Shown piece after piece: positions 17,001-32,467 of a stretch of DNA of 64,000 nt (the stretch's first letter is position 1; each line of letters starts with the position of its first letter). Below the pieces are notes generated by a model that was given only the letters and a program-made list of their open reading frames with translations, had not been told where the DNA came from and did not search any database. Both the position numbers and the translations under genes were made by a program. Location: the sequence record NC_047838.1; one strand, given 5' to 3'.

Positions 17001-17012
17001 AAAGACCTTACG

Positions 17013-17075: not shown

Positions 17076-18161
17076 ATGTCTCAGTATAAGAAGACAGCAC
17101 TTGTTCTTGGTGCTGGTGGATTTATTGGAAGTCATATGGTCAAACGCCTACGCGCTGAGGGATATTGGGTGCGCGGTGTGGACCTTAAGGATACTGAGTT
17201 TTCATCGACTCAAGCACATGAATTTGTCACCGGTGATCTACGTGATGTGAGGTTTGTTCGTGAGTGTATCCAGTTCAAAGGATACCCTGGCAACTTTAAT
17301 GCAAACGTACCTTATCAGTATGTTGAACCTTTTGATGAGATCTATCAGTTTGCTGCTGATATGGGTGGAGCAGGATTTGTCTTTACTGGAGAGAATGATG
17401 CAGAGATTATGCATAACTCCTGTACTATTAACTTGAATGTTCTTGAGGAAGTTCGTAAACTGAACGAGACCTTCGATGGTGTTGTAAAAGAATGGACGGA
17501 AGCAAATCGTCCTAAGTTGGATCAACCCACCAAGATCTTCTACTCTGGATCTGCTTGCATGTATCCTGAGTATAATCAACTTGACCCTGATAACCCTGAT
17601 TGCCGTGAAGAATCAGCATACCCAGCAGCACCAGACTCAGAGTATGGGTGGGAGAAACTCTTCAGTGAGCGGTTGTATCTCGCTTATAATAGGAATCATG
17701 GCATTCCTATTTGTATTGCTCGCTACCACAATATCTTCGGACCAGAAGGAACCTGGGAGGGAGGAAGAGAGAAAGCGCCAGCTGCAATCTGCCGCAAGGT
17801 CGCTTATCTCCCGGAGTCGGGTGGAGCAATCGAGGTGTGGGGAGATGGTCTACAGACTCGTTCCTTCCTGTTCATTGATGAATGCATCGAAGCGACTTGG
17901 AGACTAATGCAGTCTGACTTCCAAGGACCTGTGAATATTGGTTCTGAAGAGATGGTTACAATCAATCAACTCGTGGATACCGTTGCTAAAGTTTCTGGTA
18001 AGGATGTGAACAAGATTCATATCGATGGTCCTCTTGGAGTCCGTGGTCGTAACTCTAACAACGATCTGATTCGTGAGAATCTTGGATGGGATTATCAGAT
18101 GACTCTTGAGGAGGGCATCGCTAAAACTTATGCATGGATTGAGGAGCAAACTAAACAGTGA
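17076..18161 (+). CDS. NAD-dependent epimerase, GDP-mannose 3,5-epimerase-like
   Basis: GAGGFIGSH, AADMGGAGF, SGSACMYP, YGWEK, GREKAPAA. Confidence 0.85.
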   Translation: MSQYKKTALVLGAGGFIGSHMVKRLRAEGYWVRGVDLKDTEFSSTQAHEFVTGDLRDVRFVRECIQFKGYPGNFNANVPYQYVEPFDEIYQFAADMGGAGFVFTGENDAEIMHNSCTINLNVLEEVRKLNETFDGVVKEWTEANRPKLDQPTKIFYSGSACMYPEYNQLDPDNPDCREESAYPAAPDSEYGWEKLFSERLYLAYNRNHGIPICIARYHNIFGPEGTWEGGREKAPAAICRKVAYLPESGGAIEVWGDGLQTRSFLFIDECIEATWRLMQSDFQGPVNIGSEEMVTINQLVDTVAKVSGKDVNKIHIDGPLGVRGRNSNNDLIRENLGWDYQMTLEEGIAKTYAWIEEQTKQ

Positions 18162-18964
18162 TTGGATTTAATTATCTTGGCAAACTGGGGCAACTTGGAA
18201 ATCAAATGTTCCAGGTTGCTGCCCTGAAAGGTATTGCTGCCAATCGTGGTTTTAACTTTTGCTTTCCAAACCATGATGAAGTTTTTGATGATGGTATCGG
18301 AAACAAACTGCACATCGAATTGTTCAAACCATTCAAGTTGTCTCGCACCAGTCAACTGAATCTTCAGGCAATTGATCCTGACAGACCTGTAGTTCAGGAG
18401 CAAGGATTTCAATTCAACGAAACTCTGTTTAATGAGTGTCCTGACTGGGTGAGTCTGTATGGATTCTTCCAGACTGAAAAATACTTCAAGCATATTGAAG
18501 ATGAGATCCGTGAGGACTTCTCATTTAAGGATGAGATTGAGGGACCATGTAAGGAGATGATTGAAGCAGTTGAAGAACCGATTGGTCTTCACATTCGTAG
18601 AGGAGATTTTCTTACGAATAACGCTAATCACAACAATCTGACCCTTGAATACTATGCTGAAGCATTAGATAAATTTAAGTCAGATAGAAATGTGATTATT
18701 TTTTCTGATGATACTGAGTGGTGTAAGCAACAGGAACTGTTCTCTGGCGATAGATTCCTTGTCTCAGAAAGTGGCAACCCATATGTTGATCTCTGTCTGA
18801 TGAGCATGTGCTCTGACTTTATTATTGCCAACAGCACGTTCTCCTGGTGGGGTGCATGGTTGGCGAATAGAGGTACAGTCATCGCTCCTAAGAAATGGTT
18901 CGGACCTAATAACGCACACCTAGATACTAGTGACTTATATCCTGAGAGTTGGACTGTGATATGA
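18158..18964 (+). CDS. GT11 alpha-1,2-fucosyltransferase-like
   Basis: GQLGNQMFQ, HIRRGDF, IFSDD, ANSTFSWWGAWL. Confidence 0.9.
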   Translation: MIGFNYLGKLGQLGNQMFQVAALKGIAANRGFNFCFPNHDEVFDDGIGNKLHIELFKPFKLSRTSQLNLQAIDPDRPVVQEQGFQFNETLFNECPDWVSLYGFFQTEKYFKHIEDEIREDFSFKDEIEGPCKEMIEAVEEPIGLHIRRGDFLTNNANHNNLTLEYYAEALDKFKSDRNVIIFSDDTEWCKQQELFSGDRFLVSESGNPYVDLCLMSMCSDFIIANSTFSWWGAWLANRGTVIAPKKWFGPNNAHLDTSDLYPESWTVI

Positions 18965-19677
18965 AACTTGCCGTTGTTTTTATTGGCACAGGTGACTATA
19001 TTAACTTCTTACCTTCATATTATGAGGCATGTGAAGAGTTTCTAGTCCCTAATACTGAGAAGACATACTTTGTTTTTACTGATGGTGACATCGGTGATCC
19101 TCCAGAGAATGTGAAACTGTATGAGCAAGAGCATCTGCCTTGGCCATATATCACTCTGGAGCGTTTTAAGTATATCTTAAAAGCAGAGTCTGACCTAGCA
19201 GAATTTGATTATGTTCTCTTCCTAGATGCAGACACCCGTGTGGTTGAGACTGTGACTGAGGAAGAATTGTTCACCGACAAGAAATATATTGGTGTTCATC
19301 ACCCCTGCCATTTCTTGGGTATGCCACCTCATGACAACCCTCCTGGTGCCTTTGAGACACGCTTTGAATCTGCTGCTGGTATTTCAGGTGATGATGACAC
19401 CTCAATTTACTTCCAGGGGTGTCTGTGGGGAGGTAAGATGCCCTATGTTCTTGATATGATTAGGGAGTTGGCACAGAGAACTCAGTTTGATTTAAATCGT
19501 GATGTCATCGCACAGTGGCATGATGAGAGTCAGATGAATAAATTCTTTTGTGAACGCAGAGAAGACGTTCATGTGATGGGACCAGAATATGCATACCCAG
19601 AATGCTTTGGAGCATACTGCACCTTTGAACCCAAAATCGTGCATCTAGCAAAGGACAATTCAAAGTATCAGCAGTAA
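18961..19677 (+). CDS. GT6 family glycosyltransferase
   Basis: FIGTGDY, WPYITLERF, FLDAD, WHDESQMNK. Confidence 0.85.
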   Translation: MKLAVVFIGTGDYINFLPSYYEACEEFLVPNTEKTYFVFTDGDIGDPPENVKLYEQEHLPWPYITLERFKYILKAESDLAEFDYVLFLDADTRVVETVTEEELFTDKKYIGVHHPCHFLGMPPHDNPPGAFETRFESAAGISGDDDTSIYFQGCLWGGKMPYVLDMIRELAQRTQFDLNRDVIAQWHDESQMNKFFCERREDVHVMGPEYAYPECFGAYCTFEPKIVHLAKDNSKYQQ

Positions 19678-20357
19678 TGTTTAACAGGTATGTAAATAAA
19701 GCAGACTTGCTTATCTACAGTAAGTTTATTTTAGATAATCAGTATCCTGATAGATACAGGATGAAGAACGATCAAGAGCAGCACCTTTATAAGACACCTG
19801 ATTGTTATTCAAAGTGGGCGTCTATCCTGATGATGTTTAATGAGATTAAAAAGGATGGTATAAAGGTTGTCGATCTGGGTGTAGGTGAGGGACCAGTTCC
19901 ACATATTATCTGTGACCAAGGATATGATGTCACAGGTGTTGATAATATGAGAATAGATCATCCATTTAAGACTAGTCTGGTACAGATGATTTTAAGAGAT
20001 GCCATCGAATTTCTTACAGATATTGAGGAAGAATCAGTTGATGTATTTACTGACAGTTGCTCTGTAACTCACTTTGATTTTGGTGGTGGACAAAATCCTG
20101 GATGGAAAAATGTGTTATCTAGTGTGTATCAAAAATTAAAACCAGGTGGATACTTTCTAATCGCTAGTGATTGTCATGCTCTACCTGAGAGAAAAACAAA
20201 CGGAGAGTTTTTGTTAGGAGAGGAAATTGCTGCTACTGCAAAGGAGTGTGGATTTACGTTGACCACAGAGTTTAATAATGATAAGATGGATATAATTTAT
20301 AGAAACGCTGGTCGAGAAACAGACTTATCCGTTGCAACCTTTATGTTAAAAAAATGA
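19677..20357 (+). CDS. class I SAM-dependent methyltransferase
   Basis: VVDLGVGEG motif I; LKPGGY. Confidence 0.8.
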   Translation: MFNRYVNKADLLIYSKFILDNQYPDRYRMKNDQEQHLYKTPDCYSKWASILMMFNEIKKDGIKVVDLGVGEGPVPHIICDQGYDVTGVDNMRIDHPFKTSLVQMILRDAIEFLTDIEEESVDVFTDSCSVTHFDFGGGQNPGWKNVLSSVYQKLKPGGYFLIASDCHALPERKTNGEFLLGEEIAATAKECGFTLTTEFNNDKMDIIYRNAGRETDLSVATFMLKK

Positions 20358-20890
20358 TTAAACTTGTTATTCTTGATGTCGATGGTGTAATGACTGACGG
20401 CAAGAAGTATTATGATCGTGACGGTAATGTCGTGATGAAAAACTTCTGTGATAAAGACTGGACTGCAGTCAAACGCTTTCGTGCGATTGGAATCCCTGTT
20501 GTATTTTTGACAGGCGACCCCTTCAACGCCAAAATTCTAAGTAATAGAAACTTACCATACGTTGTCAATCGTGGTGAAGGATTTCATAGAGATAAGGTAA
20601 ATTTCCTTGATGAGATTCTTCTTGACTACAATTGTGGAGCAGAGGATGTTGTTTATCTGGGTGACGATCTGTTTGATTATGGTATAATGGAGGCAGTAGG
20701 ACACCCTTACTCCATGGCAGACTCTCCTGCTATGCTTCAGAACATTTCTGTGCCTCTTGCCTGCAAGGGTGGAGAGAATGCTATCATGTATCTGTACGAA
20801 GATCTGGAGGAACTGGAGATTATTCCTCGTATTCCTTATGATGTTGTCATGGAAAAAATCTACGAACTTGATTTGAAGGAAAAATTCTGA
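20354..20890 (+). CDS. KdsC-like HAD phosphatase
   Basis: ILDVDGVMTDG, LTG, YLGDDLFD. Confidence 0.8.
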   Translation: MIKLVILDVDGVMTDGKKYYDRDGNVVMKNFCDKDWTAVKRFRAIGIPVVFLTGDPFNAKILSNRNLPYVVNRGEGFHRDKVNFLDEILLDYNCGAEDVVYLGDDLFDYGIMEAVGHPYSMADSPAMLQNISVPLACKGGENAIMYLYEDLEELEIIPRIPYDVVMEKIYELDLKEKF

Positions 20891-21561
20891 TGAAAGATAT
20901 TTCTCTTTATGGTCACTTGACGATTGATACGATTGTCGATGGTGTTAAAGAAAGAAAGACTCTGGGTTCTATGGCAAACGTCTGGAAAGCGTTGCTAGAA
21001 CTAGATGCGACCCTTGATATTGGTCTCTCACCTATTGATGTGGGTCAAGCGTTGATCTATATCGATAAACCTGCTGCTCAACGGTACTCAAAGGTGCAGT
21101 TGAGTCTGGTAGAACATCAGGCAAAGATCTACTCATCGAAGATTCATCACCTGATTTACCTTAATGAGTTGACTCGGACTGATTTCATCCCTGCTCTGGA
21201 CGGTATTATCACCGCAGACATCTGTCCTGGTAGGTCTGTCAATAAAGAGTTACTCAAGCATGTAGACTATCTGTTTATTTCTGATGAGGATATTGATGGT
21301 GACTTGTCTGACTACACAGAGGTAACAAGAGGATGGGTAATTCTGCATAGTGCCTCTGGTAGTGTGGTCTCAAACGGTGAGAAGGAGTTTTTCTACAAGT
21401 TGCCAGAGGATTTGATGCTCAGGGATGTGAATGTCCTTGGTGCAGGTGATACATTTGCCTCTTGTTTCTTGCATAAATTACTACAGAATGAAGGAGATAT
21501 CCACAACTGGATTGAATTTGCTCATTTAAAGACGACTGAAATCATTAGGAATTCAATATGA
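20890..21561 (+). CDS. PfkB family sugar kinase
   Basis: NVLGAGDTFASCF anion-hole motif. Confidence 0.75.
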   Translation: MKDISLYGHLTIDTIVDGVKERKTLGSMANVWKALLELDATLDIGLSPIDVGQALIYIDKPAAQRYSKVQLSLVEHQAKIYSSKIHHLIYLNELTRTDFIPALDGIITADICPGRSVNKELLKHVDYLFISDEDIDGDLSDYTEVTRGWVILHSASGSVVSNGEKEFFYKLPEDLMLRDVNVLGAGDTFASCFLHKLLQNEGDIHNWIEFAHLKTTEIIRNSI

Positions 21562-22715
21562 AACCAAATATCCTTGTCCCTATGGCAGGACTTGGGAGCC
21601 GCTTCATCAAAGAAGGGTTCAAGGTTCCCAAGCAGTTAATTAATATCAAAGATAAACATCTGATTGACATCTCTCTTGATTGTTTGGATTATGAGGGATG
21701 CAATCTTATTTTTGTGGTTCGTGATGAGACAGTCTATAATCACCACATGGACGAACTTCTGCGTAAGAAGTTTGGTGACGACATCAAAGTAGTTATTCTC
21801 GATAAACTAACAGATGGATCGGTTTCTAGTTGTCTTTACGCCGAAGAATATATTGACAACGATGCTCCTCTTATTATTCATACTCTGGATATTGAGTTTA
21901 GACCCGTTTTTAATCCTCATGTTATGACAGAGATGGATGCTGATGGACTGATCCTCACATTCAAATCAAACTCTGCAAACTACAGTTATGCTAAGGTCGG
22001 TGACGATGGATTTGTCACGGAGACTGCAGAGAAGAAAGCAATTAGCAATAATGCCTGTGTAGGAATCTATGGATTCAAGAAAGGATCTGACTTCTGCAAG
22101 TATGCACGAGACATGATCAACCGTGACCTACGCACTAAGAATGAGTTTTATATCTCTCCACTTTACAATCTTTTGATTGAAGACAACAAACAGATCAAGA
22201 CACGATCTGTAGATAAAATGCATGTCTTTGGAACTCCTGATGAATATCACTTCTACAAAGATAATGTCACTCGTCGTATTGGTGATAAACCTATTGCCAT
22301 TTGTTCTGATCATTCTGGCTTTGAGGCAAAAGAAATCTTCAAAGAAGTTCTAGACAAGCATGGTCTGGAGTATATTGACTTTGGAACTGTGTTGAATCGT
22401 GATTGTGACTACCGTGATTACATCGCATCAGCAGTCAAATCTATCGGTGAGCGTGATTGTGACTATGGATTTGGGTTTTGTCGCACAGGTCAAGGTGTGA
22501 ATATCTGTGCAAACAAGTACAAAGGTATTAGATCTGCTCTGATTTATGATAATTTTGCTATGGAAATGTCAATCCGACACAACTGTGCAAACTTTTTTGC
22601 TATCCCAGCAAAGGATGCAGACTATGATGTATTAGATAAGTATCTTGAGATCTGTTCCTCCAATACCTTTGATGGTGGTCGTCATCAGATTCGTATTCAG
22701 GAGTTGGAGAAGTGA
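21558..22715 (+). CDS. sugar-phosphate nucleotidyltransferase fused to an RpiB-family isomerase
   Basis: N-terminal VPMAGLGSRF...FGTPDE; C-terminal (from about 22290) SDHSG, FCRTGQG, ANKYKGIR, RHNCAN, GGRH. Confidence 0.85.
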   Translation: MKPNILVPMAGLGSRFIKEGFKVPKQLINIKDKHLIDISLDCLDYEGCNLIFVVRDETVYNHHMDELLRKKFGDDIKVVILDKLTDGSVSSCLYAEEYIDNDAPLIIHTLDIEFRPVFNPHVMTEMDADGLILTFKSNSANYSYAKVGDDGFVTETAEKKAISNNACVGIYGFKKGSDFCKYARDMINRDLRTKNEFYISPLYNLLIEDNKQIKTRSVDKMHVFGTPDEYHFYKDNVTRRIGDKPIAICSDHSGFEAKEIFKEVLDKHGLEYIDFGTVLNRDCDYRDYIASAVKSIGERDCDYGFGFCRTGQGVNICANKYKGIRSALIYDNFAMEMSIRHNCANFFAIPAKDADYDVLDKYLEICSSNTFDGGRHQIRIQELEK

Positions 22716-23032
22716 TTGAAGCAAATATTCAAGACTTTCATGGGGGATGGTTCGTAGGAGACTTCGATCCATCCCTTTTCAAGAACCCATTTTTTGAGGT
22801 TGCACACCATAAACATGAGAAAGGATGTGAAACATTCCCTCATTTTCACAAAGTCACTAATGAGTTGAACTATATTGTGAGTGGTGAACTCATGGTTTCT
22901 GGTAAACATTTGAAAGCAGGAGACATGTGGATCTATGAACCGAATGAAGTCTCTGATGTTGAGTTCCTTGAGGACTCTGAATTGATTATTGTAAGGTGGC
23001 CATCTATTCCCTCTGATAAGTATCCAGCATGA
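22712..23032 (+). CDS. cupin-domain protein
   Basis: GGWFVGDFDP...HFHKVTNELNYIVSG. Confidence 0.75.
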   Translation: MIEANIQDFHGGWFVGDFDPSLFKNPFFEVAHHKHEKGCETFPHFHKVTNELNYIVSGELMVSGKHLKAGDMWIYEPNEVSDVEFLEDSELIIVRWPSIPSDKYPA

Positions 23033-23781
23033 AACTAGCACTTTGTTTTTCGGGGCAACCCAGGTTCACAGAGGAGTGTTCTGGTAGCATTCTTGCTAAT
23101 GTTATCCAAAATCATGACGTTGATGTCTTCGCACACCTGTGGTTTGACGAAGATTTGCAGACAAAACCCTATAAATTTGGTGGAACTGGTGCATGGGAGG
23201 CACAGAGAATCCAAGAGAATGCTATTGAGACCTTCCAAAAGATCTACCAACCTGTCAGTCTGGCAGTAGAAAAGAGCAAATTCTTTGGTGATCCTGACCT
23301 TGATGCTGACTTTGAGGCATCAGAAGCAAAGTATTGGCCAGGTGGTATTGAAGAGCAACCAGACTTTCAGAAGAGACAAATCAACAACAGTCTCTCATAT
23401 TTCTACAGTCTCTGTGAGGCAAATAGATTAAGAAAACTGTATGAATATGATAATAAGATAAAATATGATTATGTAATTAGATGTAGAACCGATAGCGTGG
23501 TGCAAGTTCCCATCCCATATGAGAAATTTGACCCTAATGCAATCCATTTTACGTCACTTCAAGCACCTCCACCGTTCCTGAATGACTGGTTTAACTTCGG
23601 TGGACCCGAAGCGATGGAGTCATTTATGGGTGTATTCCCTCTCCTTCGCAGTTTGATCCGCTCAACTAAGGAGAGACGTGAGGGAACATGGTGCATCGAA
23701 CTAATTCATGTGGAGTTGCTAGATAGAATGGGCATCCCCATGCAGAGGCATCCAATCCCCGTCACACTTCCAAGATTCTGA
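23029..23781 (+). CDS. putative glycosyltransferase (paralog of 27869)
   Basis: ALCFSGQPRF, YDYVIRCRTD, DWF motifs. Confidence 0.6.
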   Translation: MKLALCFSGQPRFTEECSGSILANVIQNHDVDVFAHLWFDEDLQTKPYKFGGTGAWEAQRIQENAIETFQKIYQPVSLAVEKSKFFGDPDLDADFEASEAKYWPGGIEEQPDFQKRQINNSLSYFYSLCEANRLRKLYEYDNKIKYDYVIRCRTDSVVQVPIPYEKFDPNAIHFTSLQAPPPFLNDWFNFGGPEAMESFMGVFPLLRSLIRSTKERREGTWCIELIHVELLDRMGIPMQRHPIPVTLPRF

Positions 23782-23782
23782 T

Positions 23783-25357
23783 ATGAAAGTTGTAATTCCC
23801 ATGTCTGGGATGAGTCGTAGATTCTCAGTAGCAGGTTATAAAGATCCAAAATACCTTTTAGAGATTGATGGCATGACTGTCATCGAACATATTGTCAATC
23901 TGTATCCAAAAGACTCAGAGTTTGTATTCATTATTAATGACAAACATGAGAAAGAGACTGAAGTAGTTGAAGTTTTGAACCGTATTACAGATGATCCGAC
24001 CATCATTACCATCAATCAACATAAGAAAGGACCAGTTCATACGGTATTAGAGGCAGAGAGATTTATCGATGATGATGAACCTGTCATCGTTAATTACTGT
24101 GACTTCTCTATGAAGTGGGACTACGATGACTTTGTTTCTCACGTCGAAGACACCGAGTGTGATGGGTCTGTGATCTCATATACTGGATTCCACCCTCACA
24201 TGCTGGGTAGTGATAACTATGCTTTCTGTAGATTAAGAGAAGGATCATATCAGATCGAAGAGATTAGAGAGAAGCAACCATTTACTGACAACAAGATGTC
24301 AGAGTATGCCTCTACTGGCACTTACTATTTCAAGAAAGGTAAGTATATCAAGCATTATTTTCAGCAATTGATTGATGAAGAAATCAGTTGTAAGGATGAA
24401 TATTATGTCAGTCTTGTTTACAACTTGATGATTAAGGATGGACTTTATAACACCGTATATGAGGTCCCAAACATGCTTCAGTGGGGAACACCACTAGATG
24501 TGAAGATGTATCAGCAGTGGTCAAATTACTATGCTGACAATATGAATGGCATCAAACTTCTTAAAATTAAGGGATGCACCACCGTCATTCCCATGGCAGG
24601 TGCAGGTAGTAGATTCTCAAAAGAAGGATACGGAGTTCCCAAACCATTTCTTGAAGTGAATGGTGGATATATGATCAATCAGGCACTCCGATGCCTTCCT
24701 GAAACTGATAATAAGATCTTTGCATGTCTCAGATCTCATATGAGTATGCTGCCCCTAGAGGACTTTGAAAACGTTGTTTGGATTGATGAGGTCACAGAGG
24801 GACAAGCTTGCACCACAGAATTATTGGTTGACAAAGTGAACGAGGGTGATTCAATTCTACTCTCTGCATGTGATAATGGTGCTCTCTATGACTCAGATAA
24901 GTTTGCAGACCTTATTGAGAATGTTGAGAATGATATTGTAGTCTGGAGTTATAGAAATAATTACACAGCACACCACAATCCCAACATGTATTCGTGGTTA
25001 GATGTGGATGATGATGGAAATGTTAACAAGGTAAATGTCAAGAAATTCCCATATGGATCAAACCCTGTAGATGAATATGCTATAGTAGGGACTATGTTCT
25101 TTAGAAATAAAGAAGTTTATAAAAAATCTCTTGAACGACTGTATGAAATCGATGAGAGAGTTAACGGTGAGTTCTATGTAGATACACTATTGAACACCGC
25201 AATAGAACTTGGATACAAGGTCAAGAATTTTGAGATTGATCACTATATTTGTTGGGGAACACCTAACGATTTAAAGACTTATAGATACTGGCAAAGATTT
25301 TTTACATCTGTAGATTGGCACCCTTATGACTACTATAAAGATTTCTTCACAGATTAG
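23783..25357 (+). CDS. tandem double sugar-phosphate nucleotidyltransferase
   Basis: Two domains, IPMSGMSRRF..WGTPLD and (from about 24578) IPMAGAGSRF..WGTPND. Confidence 0.8.
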   Translation: MKVVIPMSGMSRRFSVAGYKDPKYLLEIDGMTVIEHIVNLYPKDSEFVFIINDKHEKETEVVEVLNRITDDPTIITINQHKKGPVHTVLEAERFIDDDEPVIVNYCDFSMKWDYDDFVSHVEDTECDGSVISYTGFHPHMLGSDNYAFCRLREGSYQIEEIREKQPFTDNKMSEYASTGTYYFKKGKYIKHYFQQLIDEEISCKDEYYVSLVYNLMIKDGLYNTVYEVPNMLQWGTPLDVKMYQQWSNYYADNMNGIKLLKIKGCTTVIPMAGAGSRFSKEGYGVPKPFLEVNGGYMINQALRCLPETDNKIFACLRSHMSMLPLEDFENVVWIDEVTEGQACTTELLVDKVNEGDSILLSACDNGALYDSDKFADLIENVENDIVVWSYRNNYTAHHNPNMYSWLDVDDDGNVNKVNVKKFPYGSNPVDEYAIVGTMFFRNKEVYKKSLERLYEIDERVNGEFYVDTLLNTAIELGYKVKNFEIDHYICWGTPNDLKTYRYWQRFFTSVDWHPYDYYKDFFTD

Positions 25358-26438
25358 ATACTGGGACCAAAGTCCAACTAGAAGAATCACACCTACGGAC
25401 AGGAATGGTAGGACAATTGAGGTAGCATATTTTCATCTCGCTCAATTCACAGGATATTCTAAACATTATCCTCTTCCACTTCTTTACTCTTATAAGAATA
25501 AAAAACTCTCTCTACCTTTGAGAGAAAAGTTCATGTCTTTGGACAGAGGAACAGTCTATGAAGCAAGTGATATGTTTTTTGAGGATGAACTTCCTGAGGT
25601 GCAAAAGACAGTAGACATTCCCGTGTTTTACTTCGTGTATAACATGGCAAACTATTACCATTTTATCTACGATACACTGCCATATCTGTACTCTTACTTT
25701 AATGAGAAGAAGATTCACCCTGACATGAAACTCCTTGTCAGTCCGCCTGAGGGTCAGGATGATCTGTATCCTTTCGTATGGGACTCTTTGAACATGCTGG
25801 GGATTACGAAAGATGATGTGGTGTTTCTTGACCCAGAAGTGATGTATAACCGTGTATGTGTGTCATCTTCTCTGACACATAATGGTCTCTCTAACTGTCC
25901 ACCCCATGACGGTGTGTTTGAGATTTTGAATAGTTTGAAGAGTGACTATATTGGTCCAGAAAAGATTTATATCTCACGTCGCACCTGGGTTCACAATAAA
26001 AAAGACAACATCGGAACGGACTATACAGAACGTCGTCGCTGTGTAAATGAAGATCAGATGGCACAGATCTTTAAACTGTATGGATTTAAAGAAATTTTCT
26101 GTGAGAACTTGACAATGGAGGAGAAGATTGGTATGTTTAGGACTGCAAAATATGTCGCAGGTCCTATAGGTGGTGGGATGTGCAATCTTATTTTCTCTCC
26201 TTCAGAGACCAAAGTTATGTCAATCAATAGTCCTACATTCATGGATGTGAACTTGAGATTCGCATACTCTATGGTTCATACCGATCTCTTTAACTTTGAA
26301 CATACAGAGTTTGTGGATAGGCAGGAGGAGAGTGTTGAGAGTGAGGGATCTCTATCTATTACTGGGGGTCTTAATTCACCTTGGCAAGTTGATCTAAATA
26401 AACTATCCAAAATTCTTGATAAATGGATTCAATCATAG
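25326..26438 (+). CDS. GT61/DUF563-like glycosyltransferase
   Basis: NYYHF, IYISRR, RRCVNE, GPIGGGMCNLIF. Confidence 0.75.
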   Translation: MTTIKISSQIRYWDQSPTRRITPTDRNGRTIEVAYFHLAQFTGYSKHYPLPLLYSYKNKKLSLPLREKFMSLDRGTVYEASDMFFEDELPEVQKTVDIPVFYFVYNMANYYHFIYDTLPYLYSYFNEKKIHPDMKLLVSPPEGQDDLYPFVWDSLNMLGITKDDVVFLDPEVMYNRVCVSSSLTHNGLSNCPPHDGVFEILNSLKSDYIGPEKIYISRRTWVHNKKDNIGTDYTERRRCVNEDQMAQIFKLYGFKEIFCENLTMEEKIGMFRTAKYVAGPIGGGMCNLIFSPSETKVMSINSPTFMDVNLRFAYSMVHTDLFNFEHTEFVDRQEESVESEGSLSITGGLNSPWQVDLNKLSKILDKWIQS

Positions 26439-27085
26439 AGTTAGCAAGGACGTTAGGTCCATATGCTATATGCGGGGAGGGTAACGTCTCCGTGAAGGAT
26501 GATGACTGTTTCTGGGTGAAAGCAAGTGGTACATCACTTGACACTCTTGAGAAGAAAGATCTTGTCGCGTGCAAGATGAGTGGTGTGCCTTTTGATTCTC
26601 TGGGCATCAAACCAAGTATTGAAACTTCTTTTCATGCATGGTTGCAGCGTGAGTTTGATGCTATCAAGTATGTGGCACACACTCATCCTCCCAAGACGAT
26701 GCAGGTTGTGTGTTCAGAGCAGATTTACTCGTTTGCTGAGCATAGATTGTTTCCTGATCAGGTGGTGAGGAACGGTGCAAAGTCTTGCGTCGTGCCATAT
26801 GCCATGCCAGGTAAACCACTTTTAGAAGAAATTAAGAAGAGTGTTCTTGCATTTATAGAGGTTGAGGAATATTTTCCTAAATTGATCTTACTGCAGAATC
26901 ATGGTATAATTGTAGCGTCTACCTCACACAAAGAGTGTATTGCATCTACTCTGATGTGTGAAAAATCTGCAGAGATCTTTATTGGTGCAAAGGTTCTGGG
27001 TCAAACTAGATTCCTTTCTGCTGAAGAGGTTGAAGAAATTGACAAGTGTCCAAGCGAAGAAAGAAGGAGAATGATGTATCGATGA
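26423..27085 (+). CDS. class II aldolase/adducin family protein
   Basis: GEGNVS, PSIETSFH, AHTHP, LQNHG. Confidence 0.88.
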   Translation: MDSIIELARTLGPYAICGEGNVSVKDDDCFWVKASGTSLDTLEKKDLVACKMSGVPFDSLGIKPSIETSFHAWLQREFDAIKYVAHTHPPKTMQVVCSEQIYSFAEHRLFPDQVVRNGAKSCVVPYAMPGKPLLEEIKKSVLAFIEVEEYFPKLILLQNHGIIVASTSHKECIASTLMCEKSAEIFIGAKVLGQTRFLSAEEVEEIDKCPSEERRRMMYR

Positions 27086-27390
27086 TAATCTACGTTGATA
27101 TTGACGAGACCATTTGTCATAGAGAAACTTCTACTGACTTTGGAGTGACGCATGACTATACGAAAGCAAAACCCATTCAAGAAAACATAGATAAGATTAA
27201 TAAGTTGTATGATGATGGTCATACAATTGTCTATTGGACTGCACGAGGCAGTAGAAAACAGATTGACTGGACTGAACTTACTAAGAATCAATTGGAAGAG
27301 TGGGGTGCCAAGTATAATGAACTGAGAACTGACAAACCTTTCTATGATCTTTTTGTTGAAGATAAATCATGTGTGATCGAACAACTTTAA
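27082..27390 (+). CDS. small HAD-like phosphatase (capsule biosynthesis type)
   Basis: YVDIDETIC, WTARG, KPFYDLFVEDK; start at 27082. Confidence 0.75.
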   Translation: MIIYVDIDETICHRETSTDFGVTHDYTKAKPIQENIDKINKLYDDGHTIVYWTARGSRKQIDWTELTKNQLEEWGAKYNELRTDKPFYDLFVEDKSCVIEQL

Positions 27391-27872
27391 AAATTATTTC
27401 TCACCGAGGTAATATTAAAGGACCTCAACCAGACAAAGAAAATAGACCTAGTTACATCGATTGTGCTATTGGTAATGGATATCAGGTAGAGATTGATGTC
27501 AATCTACGTGATGGTGAACTGTGGTTAGGTCATGATGAACCTCAGTATAAGATCAATCATAAGTGGATTGATGAGAGAGCAGATTATCTGTGGTTGCACT
27601 GCAAGGACTTTGATGCGGCTAGAGAGTGCTGGCAATATCAAGCATTCTGTCACTCTGGTGATCCATTCGTTTACACCTCTAACGGTAAGATCTGGTTGCA
27701 TGGTGAGAATGACAACCTATATACCCTTGACGACATGACTATTATTCCAGTCATTAACGAAGAGGATTCAAAGTCCTTTGGCACTATGTTGCTGAGAGGG
27801 TCTACACAATTTTTTGGAATGCCTTTTGGTGTTTGTACTGACTACCCTGCCATTATTGGAGAATATGTATGA
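27369..27872 (+). CDS. glycerophosphodiester phosphodiesterase-like protein
   Basis: IISHRG, EN, VEIDV, LGHD, VCTD. Confidence 0.7.
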   Translation: MCDRTTLKIISHRGNIKGPQPDKENRPSYIDCAIGNGYQVEIDVNLRDGELWLGHDEPQYKINHKWIDERADYLWLHCKDFDAARECWQYQAFCHSGDPFVYTSNGKIWLHGENDNLYTLDDMTIIPVINEEDSKSFGTMLLRGSTQFFGMPFGVCTDYPAIIGEYV

Positions 27873-28624
27873 GTAAGAAATTTGCGGTTTGTTTTTCTGG
27901 GTATCCTAGATTCGTTAGACAACAATTTAAGAGCATCAAAGAGAACTTCTTAGATGGTCTGGGTGACTATGATGTCTACGCTAAGTTCCAATGGAAAGAC
28001 GATTACGAAAATATTCAGATTCATCATGAGTATGATGATAAGTTTGAGGTCAACGAACTTGAGGACTTCAAAGAACTGTATGCAGACAAACTGAAGAAGA
28101 TTGAGGTTATTGAACCATACAAGTTTGACTTAGAGTTTAGTGACCAGAGTGCTGAAGGAGATATGTTCCTGTCCAAAGAGCAGGCAAAGGATGTTGGATA
28201 TCGAATGAAGTGCCAGTTCCAAGGTATTGCTGACTGTATTGACATCATCGACAATATCGAGGACTATGATTATGTTGTCCGCATGAGGACTGATGTGACC
28301 TTCATGTCTGAGATTGAGATGAAGGACCTTGAGACTGATGTCATCATGAATCAGGATGGTTTTGTTGCTGGTCGTGATCGTCCCTGGTCTGATTGGTTCT
28401 TCATCTCTCCGGTCAAGGATGTTCAGTTCTTTCATGATATGGCAAAGATTGAGGAGCACTTTAGTGGGGGTGTCAGACACACCCATAACGTCCTTGCAGA
28501 GGTCGGACGTAAGTATGGCATGGAATACTTTGAGTTCTATGTTAGAACTCCCACAGCAACTGGTGGTGATATTGGCACACCGTTTAAGAAACAAACTAAC
28601 AAGTATACTGTTATTGCACGATGA
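27869..28624 (+). CDS. putative glycosyltransferase (paralog of 23029)
   Basis: AVCFSGYPRF, YDYVVRMRTD, SDWF. Confidence 0.6.
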   Translation: MSKKFAVCFSGYPRFVRQQFKSIKENFLDGLGDYDVYAKFQWKDDYENIQIHHEYDDKFEVNELEDFKELYADKLKKIEVIEPYKFDLEFSDQSAEGDMFLSKEQAKDVGYRMKCQFQGIADCIDIIDNIEDYDYVVRMRTDVTFMSEIEMKDLETDVIMNQDGFVAGRDRPWSDWFFISPVKDVQFFHDMAKIEEHFSGGVRHTHNVLAEVGRKYGMEYFEFYVRTPTATGGDIGTPFKKQTNKYTVIAR

Positions 28625-29637
28625 CTACAGTTTTTGCCAAGGCACCGTTGCGTTTAGCGATGGCAGGTGGCGGAACTGATCTTCTGCCATACTGGAGACA
28701 TTATGGTGGTGTGGTATTGAATGGGACGATTGACCAGTATGCTTACTGTAAGATTGAACCATACCATGAGTGGTTGTTTAAGAGTGTTGATCTTGAAGAG
28801 GAGGAGGGGTATTTTCCTCTAGGTGATCAGTATGTTGACACAAAATTAAAACTGCTGATCAATACATATCAATACCTTACAAAGGGTATTGATAGGCATC
28901 CTGTTAAGATCACAACATTTGTTGAGGCACCTCCTGGTAGTGGTCTTGGTAGTTCTAGTGCTCTTGTAGTAGCACTTATCTCTGCTATTGCTGAGTATTA
29001 CAGCATCCCTCTAGGCGAATATGATGTTGCAGAGTATGCTGTAGAGATTGAAAGAAATATTTGTAACCTTCCAGGTGGTAAGCAGGATCAATTTGCTGCT
29101 GCATTTGGTGGGTTTAACTTTATTGAGTTCTTGCCTGACGGTAGGACAATTGTGAATCCTTTGAGACTTAATCCAAAGACTCAGAACATGCTTGAGTTGA
29201 GCACGGTCTTGTATTACGTCGGCAAACCAAGGATGGACGAGAGAGTTATTGAGAATACTTCACTTAATCTCCTCAATAACGATGAAGCAACTCTACAAGC
29301 AACACATAGAATCAAATCTGCTGCCATAGAATACAAGAGAAGTCTTCTTCTAGGTGATGTTGATAAGATCTGTGAGACCATGAACACCTATTGGAAGAAC
29401 AAAATTCAGACTAATGAGAAGGTTGTCTCTCCTGAGTTGCTAGATAGTTATGAGTTTGCTCTTAAGAACGGAGCGAAAGCTGCTAAGATATCTGGTGCTG
29501 GTGGCGGTGGTCACATGATTCTCTTCACAGATTTTGAGAGGAGACATCAACTTATTTCTGCTCTGAAAAAGAGAAAGAAGGGAAGAGTGGTGCCATTTAA
29601 GTTCGTCAAACATGGGGTTGATGTATGGAGACCGTAG
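28621..29637 (+). CDS. hddA: D-glycero-alpha-D-manno-heptose 7-phosphate kinase-like GHMP kinase
   Basis: KAPLRLAMAGGGTD, PPGSGLGSSS, GGKQDQ, GAGGGG. Confidence 0.88.
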   Translation: MTTVFAKAPLRLAMAGGGTDLLPYWRHYGGVVLNGTIDQYAYCKIEPYHEWLFKSVDLEEEEGYFPLGDQYVDTKLKLLINTYQYLTKGIDRHPVKITTFVEAPPGSGLGSSSALVVALISAIAEYYSIPLGEYDVAEYAVEIERNICNLPGGKQDQFAAAFGGFNFIEFLPDGRTIVNPLRLNPKTQNMLELSTVLYYVGKPRMDERVIENTSLNLLNNDEATLQATHRIKSAAIEYKRSLLLGDVDKICETMNTYWKNKIQTNEKVVSPELLDSYEFALKNGAKAAKISGAGGGGHMILFTDFERRHQLISALKKRKKGRVVPFKFVKHGVDVWRP

Positions 29638-29975
29638 AACTTCATCCAAAAGGATGGGGATACGAAAAATGGATTGTCAATACTGATGAGTATTGTGGCA
29701 AACTTCTCTTCTTTGAAGAAGGAAAGAGGTGTTCGTGGCACTATCATAAACTGAAAGATGAAACTTTCTATCTTCAGTCTGGTAAGATGTTGCTTTATTA
29801 TGGAGACTCTGACGATCTGAACTTAGCAAAGGACCGTATCTTAGAACCAGGAGACAAGTTTCATATCTACCGTGGATTGAGACATCAGATGGTTGCAGTT
29901 GAACCGTCTGAACTTTTTGAATTTTCAACACAACATTTTGAAGATGATAGTTACAGAGTTATCAAAGGGGACTAA
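29625..29975 (+). CDS. cupin protein (sugar isomerase/epimerase-like)
   Basis: KGWGYEKW, SWHYHKLKDETF, GLRHQM. Confidence 0.75.
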   Translation: METVELHPKGWGYEKWIVNTDEYCGKLLFFEEGKRCSWHYHKLKDETFYLQSGKMLLYYGDSDDLNLAKDRILEPGDKFHIYRGLRHQMVAVEPSELFEFSTQHFEDDSYRVIKGD

Positions 29976-32422: not shown

Positions 32423-32447
32423 CTTGAGAGACAATATATACTATGAT
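32419..32447 (+). promoter_or_regulatory. sigma70-type early promoter inside the glycan island
   Basis: TTGACT-17 nt-TATGAT. Confidence 0.7.
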
Positions 32448-32467
32448 TGAAGAAACATATTGTCTGT

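What the first reader, a model, noticed from the sequence alone, without database searches (positions are those of the whole stretch)
20354..27872. Unassigned ketose-nucleotide pathway with a nucleotidyltransferase-RpiB fusion
Seen: KdsC-like HAD, PfkB kinase, NTP-transferase fused to RpiB, cupin, a tandem double NTP-transferase (three IPMxG..SRF domains in all), class II aldolase/epimerase, a second HAD and a GDPD-like protein, interleaved with GTs. I know no named pathway with this combination. Inference: pentose-phosphate intermediates (zwf, gnd and talC are in the same window) are isomerised or condensed and activated to an unusual pentulose, heptulose or alditol-phosphate donor.
Basis: partly seen in the sequence, partly recalled or inferred. 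Interest (0 to 1): 0.68.

Follow-up and report, generated by a model that had tools for sequence, protein, structure and literature searches.

The report
Cyanophage sugar-nucleotide cassettes with NT-RpiB fusion
A marine cyanophage carries two compact, intact gene sets that most likely turn pentose phosphates into activated sugars for a phage-made glycan; one of them, built around a nucleotidyltransferase fused to ribose-5-phosphate isomerase B, is a widespread but unstudied cassette, and it puts the "viral rpiB" gene in glycan synthesis rather than nucleotide supply.

Summary
The window is Synechococcus phage Bellamy, a T4-like cyanomyovirus. The stretch lies in a 24-kb island of 29 genes for soluble glycan-building proteins.

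It is two separable modules, not one pathway.
- **Module A (20354-23781):** a KdsC-type HAD phosphatase, a compact PfkB-like kinase, the NT-RpiB fusion, a small metal cupin and a GT-A glycosyltransferase (DUF7796/WavE-like). The first four genes recur in this order, with the transferase downstream, in 29 viral contigs. At 33-46% identity the cassette also occurs in other phages and in bacterial polysaccharide clusters. A minimal GDPD-fold protein is usually part of it, and in one locus that protein is fused to the HAD.
- **Module B (23783-28624):** a tandem NT, GT61, a class II aldolase/epimerase, an AfhF-type HAD, a GDPD-like protein and a second DUF7796. It recurs without module A in 11 loci, including phage S-SM2.

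Module A's parts fit a known scheme: isomerase, anomeric kinase, terminal phosphatase, nucleotidyltransferase. ADP/GDP-heptose and the recently described phage UDP-arabinofuranose pathway use the same scheme with different protein families. My best guess for the product is an NDP-pentofuranose (arabinose or ribose). The sugar itself, the cupin's role, the GDPD role and module B's chemistry remain inferred. Verdict: new variant of a known kind.

The parts
17076..41198 (+). Glycan island of phage Bellamy: 29 co-directional, mostly overlapping genes for sugar-nucleotide enzymes, glycosyltransferases, methyl- and carbamoyltransferases. This is the context of the finding.
   Evidence: ORFs; Pfam; RefSeq annotation. 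No transmembrane segments in any product. Terminator-like hairpins lie at 17012-17038 and 41263-41281.
20354..20890 (+). Module A: KdsC-type (HAD-IIIA) phosphatase, 178 aa. Proposed terminal (C5) phosphatase acting on a sugar 1,n-bisphosphate.
   Evidence: TIGR01670 E 5.6e-22, 78 bits against a cut-off of 107. D8/D10, K81 and GDDxxD are invariant, as are several Lys/Arg. Present in 28 of 29 fusion loci. dN/dS 0.09-0.16.
20890..21561 (+). Module A: compact PfkB-like kinase, 223 aa. Proposed anomeric (C1) kinase.
   Evidence: PF00294 E 5.9e-5, 23.0 bits against a cut-off of 25.8. G26, N30, D110 and GAGD are invariant; the phage form lacks the insertions of the 273-276 aa bacterial homologues, which carry PF00294. 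Present in 29 of 29 loci.
21558..22715 (+). Module A: fusion of a sugar-phosphate nucleotidyltransferase (residues ~1-240) with RpiB (residues ~245-385).
   Evidence: PF00483 and PF02502. Nearest solved structures are 4evw for the NT and 1o1x/3ph3 for RpiB, E 5e-25. Invariant across 20 fusions at 33-45% identity: P8, G11, D251, H252, C308, H341, R375, R379; at least 90% conserved: R15, K25, D111, E158, K159, N342, H376. At least 45 clusters at 50% identity hold the full-length fusion. It is the only RpiB domain in the phage genome.
22712..23032 (+). Module A: small metal cupin, 106 aa. Proposed second ketol isomerase or epimerase; role inferred only.
   Evidence: Cupin_2 E 8e-5. G-W, H44, H46 and E51 are invariant in phage and bacterial cassette copies. 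It always follows the fusion gene. PDB profile hits are generic cupins.
23029..23781 (+). Module A: DUF7796/WavE-like glycosyltransferase with a GT-A fold, 250 aa.
   Evidence: AF2 model pLDDT 78, pTM 0.81. Foldseek finds GT6/GT8 at E 1e-6. VIA Z 10-11.7 to GT-A transferases. WavE-family genes occupy this position in distant cassettes.
23783..25357 (+). Module B: tandem nucleotidyltransferase, 524 aa, two NT domains of the same 4evw-like family.
   Evidence: Pfam NTP_transf_3/NTP_transferase; 4evw E 3.5e-15. Both domains keep the loop Arg and the Lys; the N-domain loop reads S-G-M-S-R-R. Conserved in 13 loci.
25326..26438 (+). Module B: GT61-family glycosyltransferase, 370 aa.
   Evidence: PF04577 E 1e-16. 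Present in 12 of 13 module-B loci. GT61 domains are fused to this NT family in other proteins (P0195, P0253).
26423..27085 (+). Module B: class II aldolase/epimerase, 220 aa. The RefSeq start at 26492 is probably too late.
   Evidence: PF00596 E 4e-26. Best NCBIfam subfamilies: L-ribulose-5-P 4-epimerase, then ribulose-1-P aldolase. Nearest PDB entry is FucA 2opi, E 1.3e-10; the alignment includes the G-N-x-S motif upstream of the RefSeq start. H-x-H, N-H-G and Glu are present.
27082..27390 (+). Module B: small HAD phosphatase, 102 aa, a homologue of the AfhF-type arabinofuranose-1,5-bisphosphate 5-phosphatase of arabinosylating phages.
   Evidence: 9iqw E 4.7e-11. 392 phage records hold a homologue, among them Mosigvirus, Serratia LC53 and Shewanella Thanatos. 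It is 36% identical to the LC53 protein that follows the A5P isomerase and the NT-kinase gene. AfhF function is taken from PMC13326640.
27369..27872 (+). Module B: minimal GDPD-fold protein, 167 aa, with the H-R-G, E-N, E-x-D and H-D motifs.
   Evidence: Family alignment and invariants. AF2 model. GDPD enzymes fill Foldseek ranks 1-16 and VIA ranks 1-21 apart from one beta-glucanase entry, Z 8.6-11.0. It is 53-62% identical to the module-B copies and only 33-45% to the module-A copies.
27869..28624 (+).
   Evidence: Aligns with 23029-23781, sharing the C-x-S-G-x-P-R and Y-D-x-V-x-R-x-R-x-D motifs. A DUF7796-like gene follows the GDPD-like gene in 9 of 13 module-B loci.

Best explanation
The stretch holds two independent sugar-nucleotide supply-and-transfer modules. 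They sit inside a phage-encoded island whose products are all soluble.

**Module A.** I read it as a non-orthologous version of the route 'isomerase, then anomeric kinase, then terminal phosphatase, then nucleotidyltransferase'.
1. The RpiB domain interconverts ribose-5-P and ribulose-5-P. These intermediates are plentiful in a host whose pentose phosphate pathway the phage boosts with zwf, gnd and talC.
2. The small metal cupin probably sets the C2 configuration, for example ribulose-5-P to arabinose-5-P.
3. The compact PfkB-like kinase phosphorylates O1.
4. The KdsC-type HAD removes the 5-phosphate.
5. The NT domain makes an NDP-pentofuranose.
6. The GT-A enzyme (DUF7796/WavE-like) transfers the sugar.

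What is shown: the domain identities, the intact catalytic residues, the conserved cassette and purifying selection. What is inferred: the order of steps, the regiochemistry, the nucleotide and the sugar.

**Module B.** This is a second activation unit: tandem NT, AfhF-type phosphatase, class II aldolase/epimerase, GT61, GDPD-like protein and a second GT-A enzyme. It has no kinase of its own, and I could not assign its product.

**GDPD-fold protein.** It belongs to both modules and its step is unknown.

**Acceptor.** The island encodes no flippase, polymerase or initiating transferase. The acceptor must therefore be a host lipid-linked or envelope precursor, or a phage protein.
For: - **Identity and context.** The window is phage Bellamy, and the island is 29 genes long.
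- **Cassette conservation in viruses.** Across 29 viral loci: HAD 28, PfkB 29, cupin 27, GDPD-like 25, DUF7796 26. The gaps fall at contig ends, except the GDPD-like copy missing from the Bellamy-like locus L003.
- **Same cassette in distant settings, at 33-46% identity.** A bacterial 199-kb contig, a Wzx/Wzy cluster and other T4-like phages all carry it.
- **Catalytic residues.** They are conserved in the NT and RpiB domains of 20 diverse fusions (invariant or >=90%), invariant in the HAD, the PfkB-like kinase and the cupin.
- **NT type.** The NT keeps the E-K pair and belongs to a family that is also fused to HAD_2 and to GT61.
- **Selection.** dN/dS is 0.05-0.2 with saturated dS.
- **Possible transcription.** Contigs from three seawater RNA libraries cover most of 20354-25357 at 95-99% identity.
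- **Precedent.** The same four-step logic has been demonstrated for phage UDP-arabinofuranose (He et al. 2026, cited in PMC13326640). The module B HAD is 36% identical to the phosphatase of that pathway in Serratia phage LC53.
- **No alternative isomerase.** The phage genome has no SIS-type isomerase, so the cupins are the only other isomerase candidates.
- **Transferase fold.** DUF7796 has a GT-A fold.
Against: - **No assay.** Nothing here identifies the sugar, the nucleotide or the order of steps by experiment or by specific homology.
- **Weak family hits.** The kinase, the HAD and the cupin all fall below their family cut-offs. Their nearest named subfamilies do not point to one substrate.
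- **Redundant isomerase.** Cells generally already have a ribose-5-phosphate isomerase (cyanobacteria carry rpiA, PMC4022391). A dedicated RpiB therefore hints at a less common substrate, such as allose-6-P/psicose-6-P.
- **No slot for the phosphodiesterase.** The simple four-step scheme has no place for the conserved GDPD-fold protein, yet that protein is fused to the HAD in L036.
- **Missing kinases.** One phage locus (L053) shows no PfkB-like gene within 21 kb. Module B has no kinase at all in L044 and L046.
- **Ribofuranose precedent.** In bacteria it is known to come from PRPP, not from an NDP-sugar (my own knowledge, Kelly et al. 2022; not checked here).
- **RNA evidence is soft.** The RNA-library contigs do not exclude DNA carry-over.
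Confidence: 0.5

Rival explanations
1. The donor is linked through its terminal phosphate. The NT domain would directly nucleotidylate the RpiB product, giving for example CDP-5-ribulose or an NDP-5-pentose. The sugar phosphate would then be transferred as a phosphodiester, teichoic-acid style, and the GDPD-fold enzyme would process that phosphodiester.
For: - The isomerase and the NT are fused, which suggests consecutive steps.
- A GDPD-fold phosphodiesterase is a core part of both modules.
- A LicD-family gene lies near the GDPD-like gene in bacterial locus L054.
- CDP-6-fructose is a precedent for a ketose nucleotidylated on its terminal phosphate (PMC10918830).
- Module B lacks a kinase.
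Against: - No reductase sits in either module, whereas the CDP-ribitol, CDP-arabinitol and CDP-glucitol pathways all have one.
- The conserved kinase and terminal phosphatase would have no job.
- The conserved transferases have GT-A folds, not TagF or LicD folds.
- The NT keeps the E-K pair typical of sugar-1-P enzymes, and its family is fused to HAD_2 mutase/phosphatase domains.
Confidence: 0.2
2. The logic is the same as in the best explanation, but the sugar is a hexose or heptose. The RpiB domain would work as an allose-6-P/psicose-6-P (or other rare ketose-phosphate) isomerase, and the product would be an NDP-allose, NDP-altrose or similar sugar.
For: - E. coli RpiB also isomerises allose-6-P (cited in PMC4022391).
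- Bacteria that carry the cassette generally already have a ribose-5-P isomerase, so a dedicated RpiB suggests an unusual substrate.
- The KdsC-type HAD family normally acts on the exocyclic terminal phosphate of longer sugars.
Against: - The cassette holds no enzyme that would make psicose-6-P from a central metabolite, that is, no ketose 3-epimerase.
- The RpiB domain is closest to ordinary Cys-type RpiB enzymes and keeps all the ribose-5-P contact residues.
- The phage context, with zwf, gnd and talC, favours pentose phosphates.
Confidence: 0.12
3. The modules feed glycosylation of phage DNA, as in the arabinosyl-hydroxycytosine T-even-like phages, rather than a surface or virion glycan.
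For: - Bellamy is a T4-like phage.
- The module B HAD is a homologue of the AfhF phosphatase of DNA-arabinosylating phages.
Against: - The complete Bellamy genome has no ThyA-family gene, so it lacks the 5-hydroxy- or 5-hydroxymethyl-dCMP synthase.
- The island holds about ten glycosyltransferase-like genes, plus methyl- and carbamoyltransferases and a uronic-acid dehydrogenase, which is typical of oligosaccharide assembly.
- Module A also sits in bacterial Wzx/Wzy polysaccharide clusters.
Confidence: 0.06
4. The RpiB gene is a plain auxiliary metabolic gene that pushes ribulose-5-P towards ribose-5-P for nucleotide synthesis, as proposed for viral rpiB in viromes, and the neighbouring genes are unrelated or are stuffer DNA.
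For: - rpiB is enriched in marine viromes on cyanophage scaffolds, and cyanobacteria lack it (PMC4022391). The control genome Synechococcus elongatus has no PF02502 match.
- Sullivan et al. 2010 left open the possibility that cyanophage 'LPS' clusters are stuffer DNA (PMC3037559).
Against: - In this lineage the RpiB is always the C-terminal domain of an NT fusion, inside a fixed cassette.
- The cassette also occurs in bacterial polysaccharide clusters.
- Every gene in it is under strong purifying selection.
Confidence: 0.05

Closest known systems
Phage UDP-D-arabinofuranose (Afh) pathway of arabinosyl-5-hydroxycytosine phages (HY126, RB69, DLP3, LC53): A5P isomerase, AfhE (NT + kinase), AfhF (HAD)
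   Same: It is a phage-encoded route from a pentose-phosphate-pathway intermediate, and it uses the same four chemical steps: isomerase, C1 kinase, C5 phosphatase, nucleotidyltransferase. One enzyme is also a bifunctional fusion. The module B small HAD is a true homologue of AfhF (36% identity).
   Different: - The isomerase is RpiB (plus a cupin), not a SIS-type KdsD.
- The kinase is PfkB-like, not APH/choline-kinase-like.
- The module A phosphatase is KdsC-type.
- The NT is only about 22% identical and is fused to the isomerase rather than to the kinase.
- There is no hydroxycytosine synthase.
- The product goes to GT-A/GT61 transferases within a large glycan island.
- A GDPD-fold protein is added.
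ADP- and GDP-heptose pathways (GmhA, HldE or HddA, GmhB, HldE-C or HddC)
   Same: The logic is the same, and two enzyme superfamilies are shared: a PfkB-type anomeric kinase as in HldE, and a HAD-IIIA terminal phosphatase as in GmhB. The NTP_transferase is of the HddC type.
   Different: No SIS isomerase is present. RpiB stereochemistry does not fit sedoheptulose-7-P. The kinase and phosphatase score far below the HldE and GmhB/KdsC models. A separate GDP-6-deoxyheptose module lies next door at 28621-32422.
CDP-alditol and CDP-ketose pathways (TarI/TarJ CDP-ribitol, AbpA/AbpB CDP-arabinitol, C. jejuni HS:5 CDP-6-fructose/CDP-6-glucitol)
   Same: They use a pentose- or hexose-phosphate input, and a nucleotidyltransferase acts next to a sugar-phosphate-modifying enzyme.
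   Different: Those pathways need a reductase and no kinase or phosphatase (PMC10918830). Here there is no reductase, and there is a conserved kinase and phosphatase.
Viral 'rpiB' auxiliary metabolic gene (Enav et al. 2014, PMC4022391)
   Same: It is probably the same gene family: an RpiB on marine cyanophage scaffolds that is absent from cyanobacterial hosts.
   Different: Here the RpiB is the C-terminal domain of a 385-aa NT fusion inside a glycan cassette. Among 50,697 isolate phage records, only Bellamy and SynMITS9220M01 carry the fusion.

Membership tests
RpiB/LacA/LacB sugar-phosphate isomerases (PF02502, TIGR00689) | Family HMM score above the curated cut-off | tested here: met
   PF02502 111.5 bits (cut-off 24.7); TIGR00689 102 bits (cut-off 88.3). 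The rpiB equivalog TIGR01120 scores 100 bits, below its cut-off of 138.65.
RpiB/LacA/LacB sugar-phosphate isomerases (PF02502, TIGR00689) | Catalytic Asp-His, Cys base in C-x-T/S-G-x-G, His-Asn, and the G-G-R-H-x-x-R phosphate site | tested here: met
   Alignment to 1o1x. D251, H252, C308, H341, R375 and R379 are invariant, and N342 and H376 at least 90% conserved, in 20 fusions.
RpiB/LacA/LacB sugar-phosphate isomerases (PF02502, TIGR00689) | Ribose-5-P/ribulose-5-P isomerase activity | not testable with these tools
   Needs an enzyme assay; allose-6-P and other substrates remain possible.
Sugar-phosphate nucleotidyltransferases (PF00483) | HMM score above cut-off, G-x-G-x-R loop, catalytic Lys, Asp and the E-K pair | tested here: met
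   g206 scores 24.1 bits and g209 26.1 bits (cut-off 21.2). G11 is invariant, and R15, K25, D111, E158 and K159 are at least 90% conserved. Both g209 domains keep the Arg and the Lys.
PfkB carbohydrate kinases (PF00294) | HMM score above the gathering score; the G-G-x-x-N and D-x-x-G-A-G-D signatures | tested here: inconclusive
   23.0 bits against a cut-off of 25.8. GAGD and G..N are invariant, and the bacterial cassette homologues carry PF00294. The phage form is about 50 aa shorter. A structure job failed and was not repeated for this protein.
KdsC (Kdo-8-P phosphatase) subfamily, TIGR01670 | Score above the subfamily cut-off | tested here: not met
   78.3 bits against a cut-off of 106.95. 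The HAD motifs I-IV are intact, so it is a KdsC-like HAD-IIIA phosphatase and is not filed as KdsC.
Afh (UDP-arabinofuranose) pathway | AfhF-type small HAD phosphatase | tested here: met
   g212 is 36% identical (E 1e-15) to the LC53 protein that lies beside the A5P isomerase and the NT-kinase gene. 392 phage records hold a homologue.
Afh (UDP-arabinofuranose) pathway | SIS-type arabinose-5-P isomerase and an AfhE-type NT fused to an APH-like kinase | tested here: not met
   No SIS domain is found in the genome. The NT is only 22% identical over 143 residues, and no APH-like kinase domain is present.
Afh (UDP-arabinofuranose) pathway | ThyA-like 5-hydroxy-dCMP synthase providing the DNA acceptor | tested here: not met
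   No PF00303 match in the complete 204,930-bp genome.
Glycerophosphodiester phosphodiesterase (GDPD) fold | TIM-barrel GDPD fold with the H-R, E-N, E-x-D and H-D catalytic motifs | tested here: met
   There is no Pfam hit, and hhalign to UgpQ gives only 30% probability. But the motifs are invariant, and the AF2 model matches GDPD enzymes at Foldseek ranks 1-16 and VIA ranks 1-21 apart from one beta-glucanase entry (Z 8.6-11.0, 139-157 residues aligned). At 150-167 aa it is a minimal version; its activity is untested.
Class II aldolase/epimerase (PF00596) | HMM score above cut-off and the zinc ligands (H-x-H, His) plus the catalytic Glu | tested here: met
   92.4 bits (cut-off 22.2). The motifs are visible in the sequence and in the alignment to 2opi. 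No equivalog cut-off is reached, so whether it is an aldolase, an epimerase or something else stays open.
GT-A fold glycosyltransferases (DUF7796 / WavE-like) | GT-A fold | tested here: met
   Model pLDDT 78, pTM 0.81. Foldseek finds GT6/GT8 at E 1e-6. VIA Z 10-11.7 over 167-182 residues. Donor and acceptor are unknown.

The most novel reading that the evidence does not exclude
The conserved set of HAD, 4evw-type NT, minimal GDPD-fold protein and GT-A transferase defines a sugar-activation scheme that includes a phosphodiester or cyclic-phosphate step not known in any nucleotide-sugar pathway.

Two examples of what that step could be:
- The GDPD-fold enzyme opens a pentofuranose 1,2-cyclic phosphate to the 1-phosphate, which the NT then activates. 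The cyclic phosphate could arise from PRPP or from decay of a labile 1,2-cis NDP-furanose.
- The GDPD-fold enzyme transfers a sugar-1-phosphate onto the acceptor.

If so, abundant marine phages would make and maintain an NDP-pentofuranose donor to remodel the host envelope or glycosylate their own virions. The 'viral rpiB AMG' would then be a glycan gene.
Probability: 0.15. Interest if true: 0.75.

Novelty: new variant of a known kind. Interest (0 to 1): 0.55.

Why it matters
- **Cyanophage 'LPS' islands.** Since 2005-2010 it has been unclear whether they are functional at all (PMC3037559). Here one is resolved into conserved, selected cassettes that each yield a testable biochemical prediction.
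- **Module A.** It is a widespread unit with no assigned function. The fusion forms at least 45 clusters at 50% identity, has 1,284 word-search relatives (E<=1e-5) in marine metagenomes, the best 120 of them 78-97% identical, and also sits in bacterial O-antigen-type clusters.
- **Non-orthologous replacement.** It would extend the 'kinase plus phosphatase' route to NDP-sugars to a new set of enzyme families.
- **Viral rpiB.** The published reading of rpiB as a nucleotide-supply gene would change to a glycan-synthesis gene.
- **Carbon metabolism.** The phage genes that rewire host carbon flow (zwf, gnd, talC) would be linked to glycan synthesis as well as to dNTP supply.
- **GDPD-fold protein.** Its tie to the pathway, including one fusion to the HAD, is unexplained and may hide new chemistry.

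Tried and rejected
- **Named organisms with the fusion.** The genome-contig scan returned only one misbinned viral contig. So no link to a known glycan structure could be made.
- **Word-based protein searches.** For the fusion and for the aldolase they listed only close marine relatives. The representatives search was needed to see distant ones.
- **PDB sequence searches.** They gave nothing for DUF7796, GT61 or the PfkB-like protein, and only weak hits for the GDPD-like protein.
- **ESM Atlas.** It returned only viral clusters without names.
- **Cupin profile against the PDB.** Only generic cupins came up (quercetinase, small 'M6P isomerase', KdgF), so its function is unassigned.
- **Literature.** I found no description of the cassette. 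No paper mentions 9IQW. The wavE search was swamped by the ordinary word 'wave'. The C. jejuni RM1221 lead (xylulose plus 6-deoxy-manno-heptose, recalled from memory) could not be followed, because no paper held the gene content.
- **PfkB-like structure.** I spent the last slot on the GDPD-like protein instead.
- **Rejected readings.**
  - Kdo-type pathway: no KdsA/KdsB.
  - Methionine-salvage-like set: the modules are separable and an NT is present.
  - Stuffer DNA: ruled out by dN/dS.
  - DNA arabinosylation: no ThyA-like gene.

Full report
**Where the window comes from.** The stretch is 100% identical to Synechococcus phage Bellamy (MF351863/NC_047838; 204,930 bp; Kyanoviridae; host WH8109). 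Window position 20354 is record position 161284. Ribonucleotide reductase, a SegE-type homing endonuclease, a tRNA cluster, pstS, hli, psbA/psbD, zwf, gnd and talC surround it. The setting, however, is a T4-like cyanophage and not a cell.

**The island.** From 17076 to 41198 there are 29 co-directional genes, mostly with overlapping stop and start codons. They encode:
- SDR enzymes;
- GT11, GT6, GT61, GT4, GT25 and an HtrL family protein;
- methyltransferases and a carbamoyltransferase;
- a NadE-like enzyme and a UDP-glucose dehydrogenase;
- a GDP-6-deoxyheptose-type set, and the genes of this finding.

None of the 29 products has a transmembrane segment. There is no flippase, polymerase, ligase or initiating phosphoglycosyltransferase. 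Terminator-like hairpins lie just before the first gene and just after the last; hairpin counts in both scans are within chance, so these are leads only. Sullivan et al. 2010 noted such 'LPS clusters' in the larger cyanophage genomes. They left open whether the clusters are functional or stuffer DNA (PMC3037559).

**Checking the observation.** Sequence evidence for the GDPD-like protein was weak. An AlphaFold model built from seven family members (pLDDT 78.6) matches GDPD enzymes first in both structure searches. The VIA Z-score is 8.6-11.0 for the first 21 chains, then drops to 7.7 or lower. The H-R, E-N, E-x-D and H-D motifs are invariant in the family. The two 'unknown' 250-aa proteins are paralogues (DUF7796). 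The model of the first is a GT-A glycosyltransferase fold: Foldseek E 1e-6 to GT6/GT8, and VIA Z 10-11.7.

**Two modules, not one pathway.** The first half of the stretch is 81.7% identical in DNA to phage SynMITS9220M01. The second half is 74.5% identical to S-SM2. Neither phage carries the other half.

*Module A.* I mapped the Bellamy proteins onto 29 IMG/VR contigs that hold the fusion (80-98% identity). The fixed order is HAD, PfkB-like, NT-RpiB, cupin, GDPD-like, sometimes an FkbM methyltransferase, then DUF7796; in two loci (L018, L021) DUF7796 precedes the GDPD-like gene. The counts are HAD 28, PfkB 29, cupin 27, GDPD-like 25 and DUF7796 26 of 29. The gaps fall at contig ends, apart from the missing GDPD-like copy in the Bellamy-like locus L003.

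*Module B.* The genes 23783-27390 occur among those 29 contigs only in the near-identical contig L003. They recur as their own unit in 12 viral contigs, two of them Bellamy-like, and in S-SM2:
- tandem NT, 13 of 13;
- GT61, 12 of 13;
- aldolase, 11 of 13;
- small HAD, 11 of 13;
- GDPD-like, 11 of 13;
- DUF7796-like, 9 of 13.

Bellamy's single GDPD-like gene is of the module B type. It is 53-62% identical to the module B copies and 33-45% identical to the module A copies.

**Module A is an old, widespread cassette.**
- A full HMMER scan of 1.84 billion cluster representatives found the complete NT-RpiB architecture in at least 45 clusters at 50% identity.
- The word search found 1,284 relatives at 90% clustering, and the best 120 are all 78-97% identical marine sequences.
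- I read contexts of members at 33-46% identity:
  - a bacterial 199-kb contig: KdsC-like HAD, PfkB, NT-RpiB, a 105-aa cupin, then a WavE-domain protein and sulfation genes;
  - a Wzx/Wzy-type polysaccharide cluster: HAD, a divergent PfkB-like protein, NT-RpiB, cupin, Wzy, with a GDPD-like gene further on;
  - other T4-like phages.
- In locus L036 the GDPD-like domain is fused to the KdsC-like HAD (hhalign probability 99.1%).
- Among 50,697 isolate phage records, only Bellamy and SynMITS9220M01 have the fusion. Other cyanophages carry a HAD_2-NT version of the same NT family.

**Are the genes functional?**
- The catalytic residues of both fusion domains are invariant or at least 90% conserved across 20 sequences at 33-45% identity. 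The HAD motifs, the kinase motifs and the cupin metal site are conserved too.
- Pairwise dN/dS against relatives is 0.05-0.2 for every gene wherever dS could be estimated; in many pairs it was too saturated to estimate.
- Contigs from three seawater RNA libraries cover most of 20354-25357 at 95-99% identity. This is compatible with transcription, but DNA carry-over is not excluded.

**How module A most likely works.** Its five proteins supply six activities:
- an aldose-ketose isomerase (RpiB);
- a second possible isomerase or epimerase (the metal cupin);
- a PfkB-type kinase;
- a terminal phosphatase;
- a nucleotidyltransferase;
- a GT-A transferase.

The same logic makes ADP- and GDP-heptose. 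It was also recently shown for phage UDP-D-arabinofuranose: ribulose-5-P goes to arabinose-5-P, then to the 1,5-bisphosphate (AfhE kinase domain), then to the 1-phosphate (AfhF HAD), then to UDP-Araf (AfhE NT domain). The source is He et al. 2026, as reported in PMC13326640.

I therefore propose this sequence:
1. RpiB links the ribose-5-P and ribulose-5-P pools.
2. The cupin sets C2.
3. The kinase phosphorylates O1.
4. The HAD removes the 5-phosphate.
5. The NT makes an NDP-pentofuranose.

Ribose-5-P, ribulose-5-P and arabinose-5-P are the only central metabolites that would use both an RpiB and a mannose-type isomerase. The phage has no SIS isomerase. For those two reasons I slightly prefer arabinofuranose to ribofuranose, but this is inference only. 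The nucleotide is unknown.

**What does not fit module A.**
- The GDPD-fold protein is part of the cassette, is once fused to the HAD, and also accompanies the HAD_2-NT version (L051). The four-step scheme has no role for it. It could open a sugar 1,2-cyclic phosphate, or it could act on a phosphodiester product. Neither idea is tested.
- One phage locus (L053) shows no kinase within 21 kb.
- Cells generally already have a ribose-5-P isomerase, so the RpiB may act on a rarer sugar phosphate.

**Module B.**
- Its small HAD is a clear homologue of the AfhF phosphatase. It is 36% identical to the Serratia phage LC53 protein that follows the A5P isomerase and the NT-kinase gene.
- The class II enzyme keeps its zinc and acid/base residues. 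It scores best with the L-ribulose-5-P 4-epimerase and ribulose-1-P aldolase models, but reaches no family cut-off.
- Both NT domains look competent.
- GT61 domains are fused to this NT family elsewhere.
- No kinase belongs to the module. Either it uses an already bisphosphorylated host metabolite, or it runs 'aldolase, phosphatase, nucleotidyltransferase' as in CMP-Kdo synthesis, or it borrows a neighbour's kinase. I could not decide among these.
- In several loci an ADP-heptose-like set sits directly upstream: an SDR, a CTP_transf_like protein, a PfkB, a small HAD and a cupin.

**Comparison with published readings.** Enav et al. 2014 found rpiB enriched in viromes on cyanophage scaffolds. 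They read it as a route to nucleotide precursors and noted that cyanobacteria lack rpiB (PMC4022391). The control genome Synechococcus elongatus indeed has no PF02502 match. In the lineage studied here the RpiB is always a domain of an NT fusion inside a glycan cassette, which argues for a role in glycan synthesis. PHROGs lists all but the two HAD families as unknown, and it names the small HAD family 'phosphoheptose isomerase', which is wrong.

**Verdict.** The finding is real and intact. It is not a described pathway by homology, but it follows a known biochemical scheme. I class it as a new variant of a known kind, with an unexplained GDPD-fold component.

Noticed in passing
window 13819-14262 (+): RefSeq names this gene 'NAD synthetase', but Pfam gives a full-length SegE GIY-YIG homing endonuclease domain (E 1.3e-54). 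Other RefSeq names in the island also look wrong: 21558-22715 is called 'phosphatase', 27082-27390 'phosphoheptose isomerase' and 29625-29975 'cysteine dioxygenase'.
   Followed up: partly
window 26423-26492: The RefSeq start of the class II aldolase gene (GTG at 26492) removes the conserved G-N-x-S phosphate-binding motif. The ORF from ATG 26423 aligns with FucA from residue 15 onward and matches the 224-aa S-SM2 annotation.
   Followed up: partly
window 17076-41198: None of the 29 island proteins has a transmembrane helix. No Wzx, Wzy, ABC transporter, ligase or initiating transferase is encoded. The glycan must therefore be built in the cytoplasm, on a host-supplied carrier or on proteins such as virion components.
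   Followed up: partly
L036:943-1899: In this metagenomic locus a 319-aa protein fuses the minimal GDPD-like domain (hhalign probability 99.1%) to the KdsC-like HAD of the cassette. The fusion links the phosphodiesterase-like protein to the phosphatase step.
   Followed up: yes
L042:5449-8020 (likewise L039-L041, L047, L048): Directly upstream of module B in other cyanophages lies an ADP-heptose-like set: an SDR, a 139-aa CTP_transf_like protein, a 252-aa PfkB, a small HAD, and a cupin 84-89% identical to window 29625-29975. There is no SIS isomerase, and Bellamy has no SIS domain at all.
   Followed up: partly
PHROG phrog_1238; window 27082-27390: The small HAD family is labelled 'phosphoheptose isomerase' in PHROGs and in many phage records. 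It is in fact a HAD phosphatase homologous to AfhF, and 392 phage records hold a homologue.
   Followed up: yes
L053 (T4-like phage contig), 8910-12296: The cassette here reads GDPD-like, HAD, NT-RpiB, cupin, DUF7796, with no detectable PfkB-like gene in the 21-kb locus.
   Followed up: partly
P0181, P0195, P0253; L051: The same NT family occurs fused to a HAD_2 (beta-phosphoglucomutase-like) domain and to GT61 domains. In one T4-like phage the HAD_2-NT gene is followed by FkbM, DUF7796, GDPD-like and DUF7796 genes.
   Followed up: partly
window 17012-17038 and 41263-41281 (+): GC-rich hairpins followed by T-runs bracket the island. Inside it the scan lists further hairpins on the + strand, the longest a 10-pair stem at 29885-29911. 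Hairpin counts in both scans are within chance, so these are leads only.
   Followed up: no
window 20354-25357: Contigs from three seawater RNA libraries (two to three studies) cover most of this stretch at 95-99% identity, and 14 DNA metagenome runs hold more than half of its sampled words. Close relatives of Bellamy are therefore common in coastal and marine samples.
   Followed up: partly
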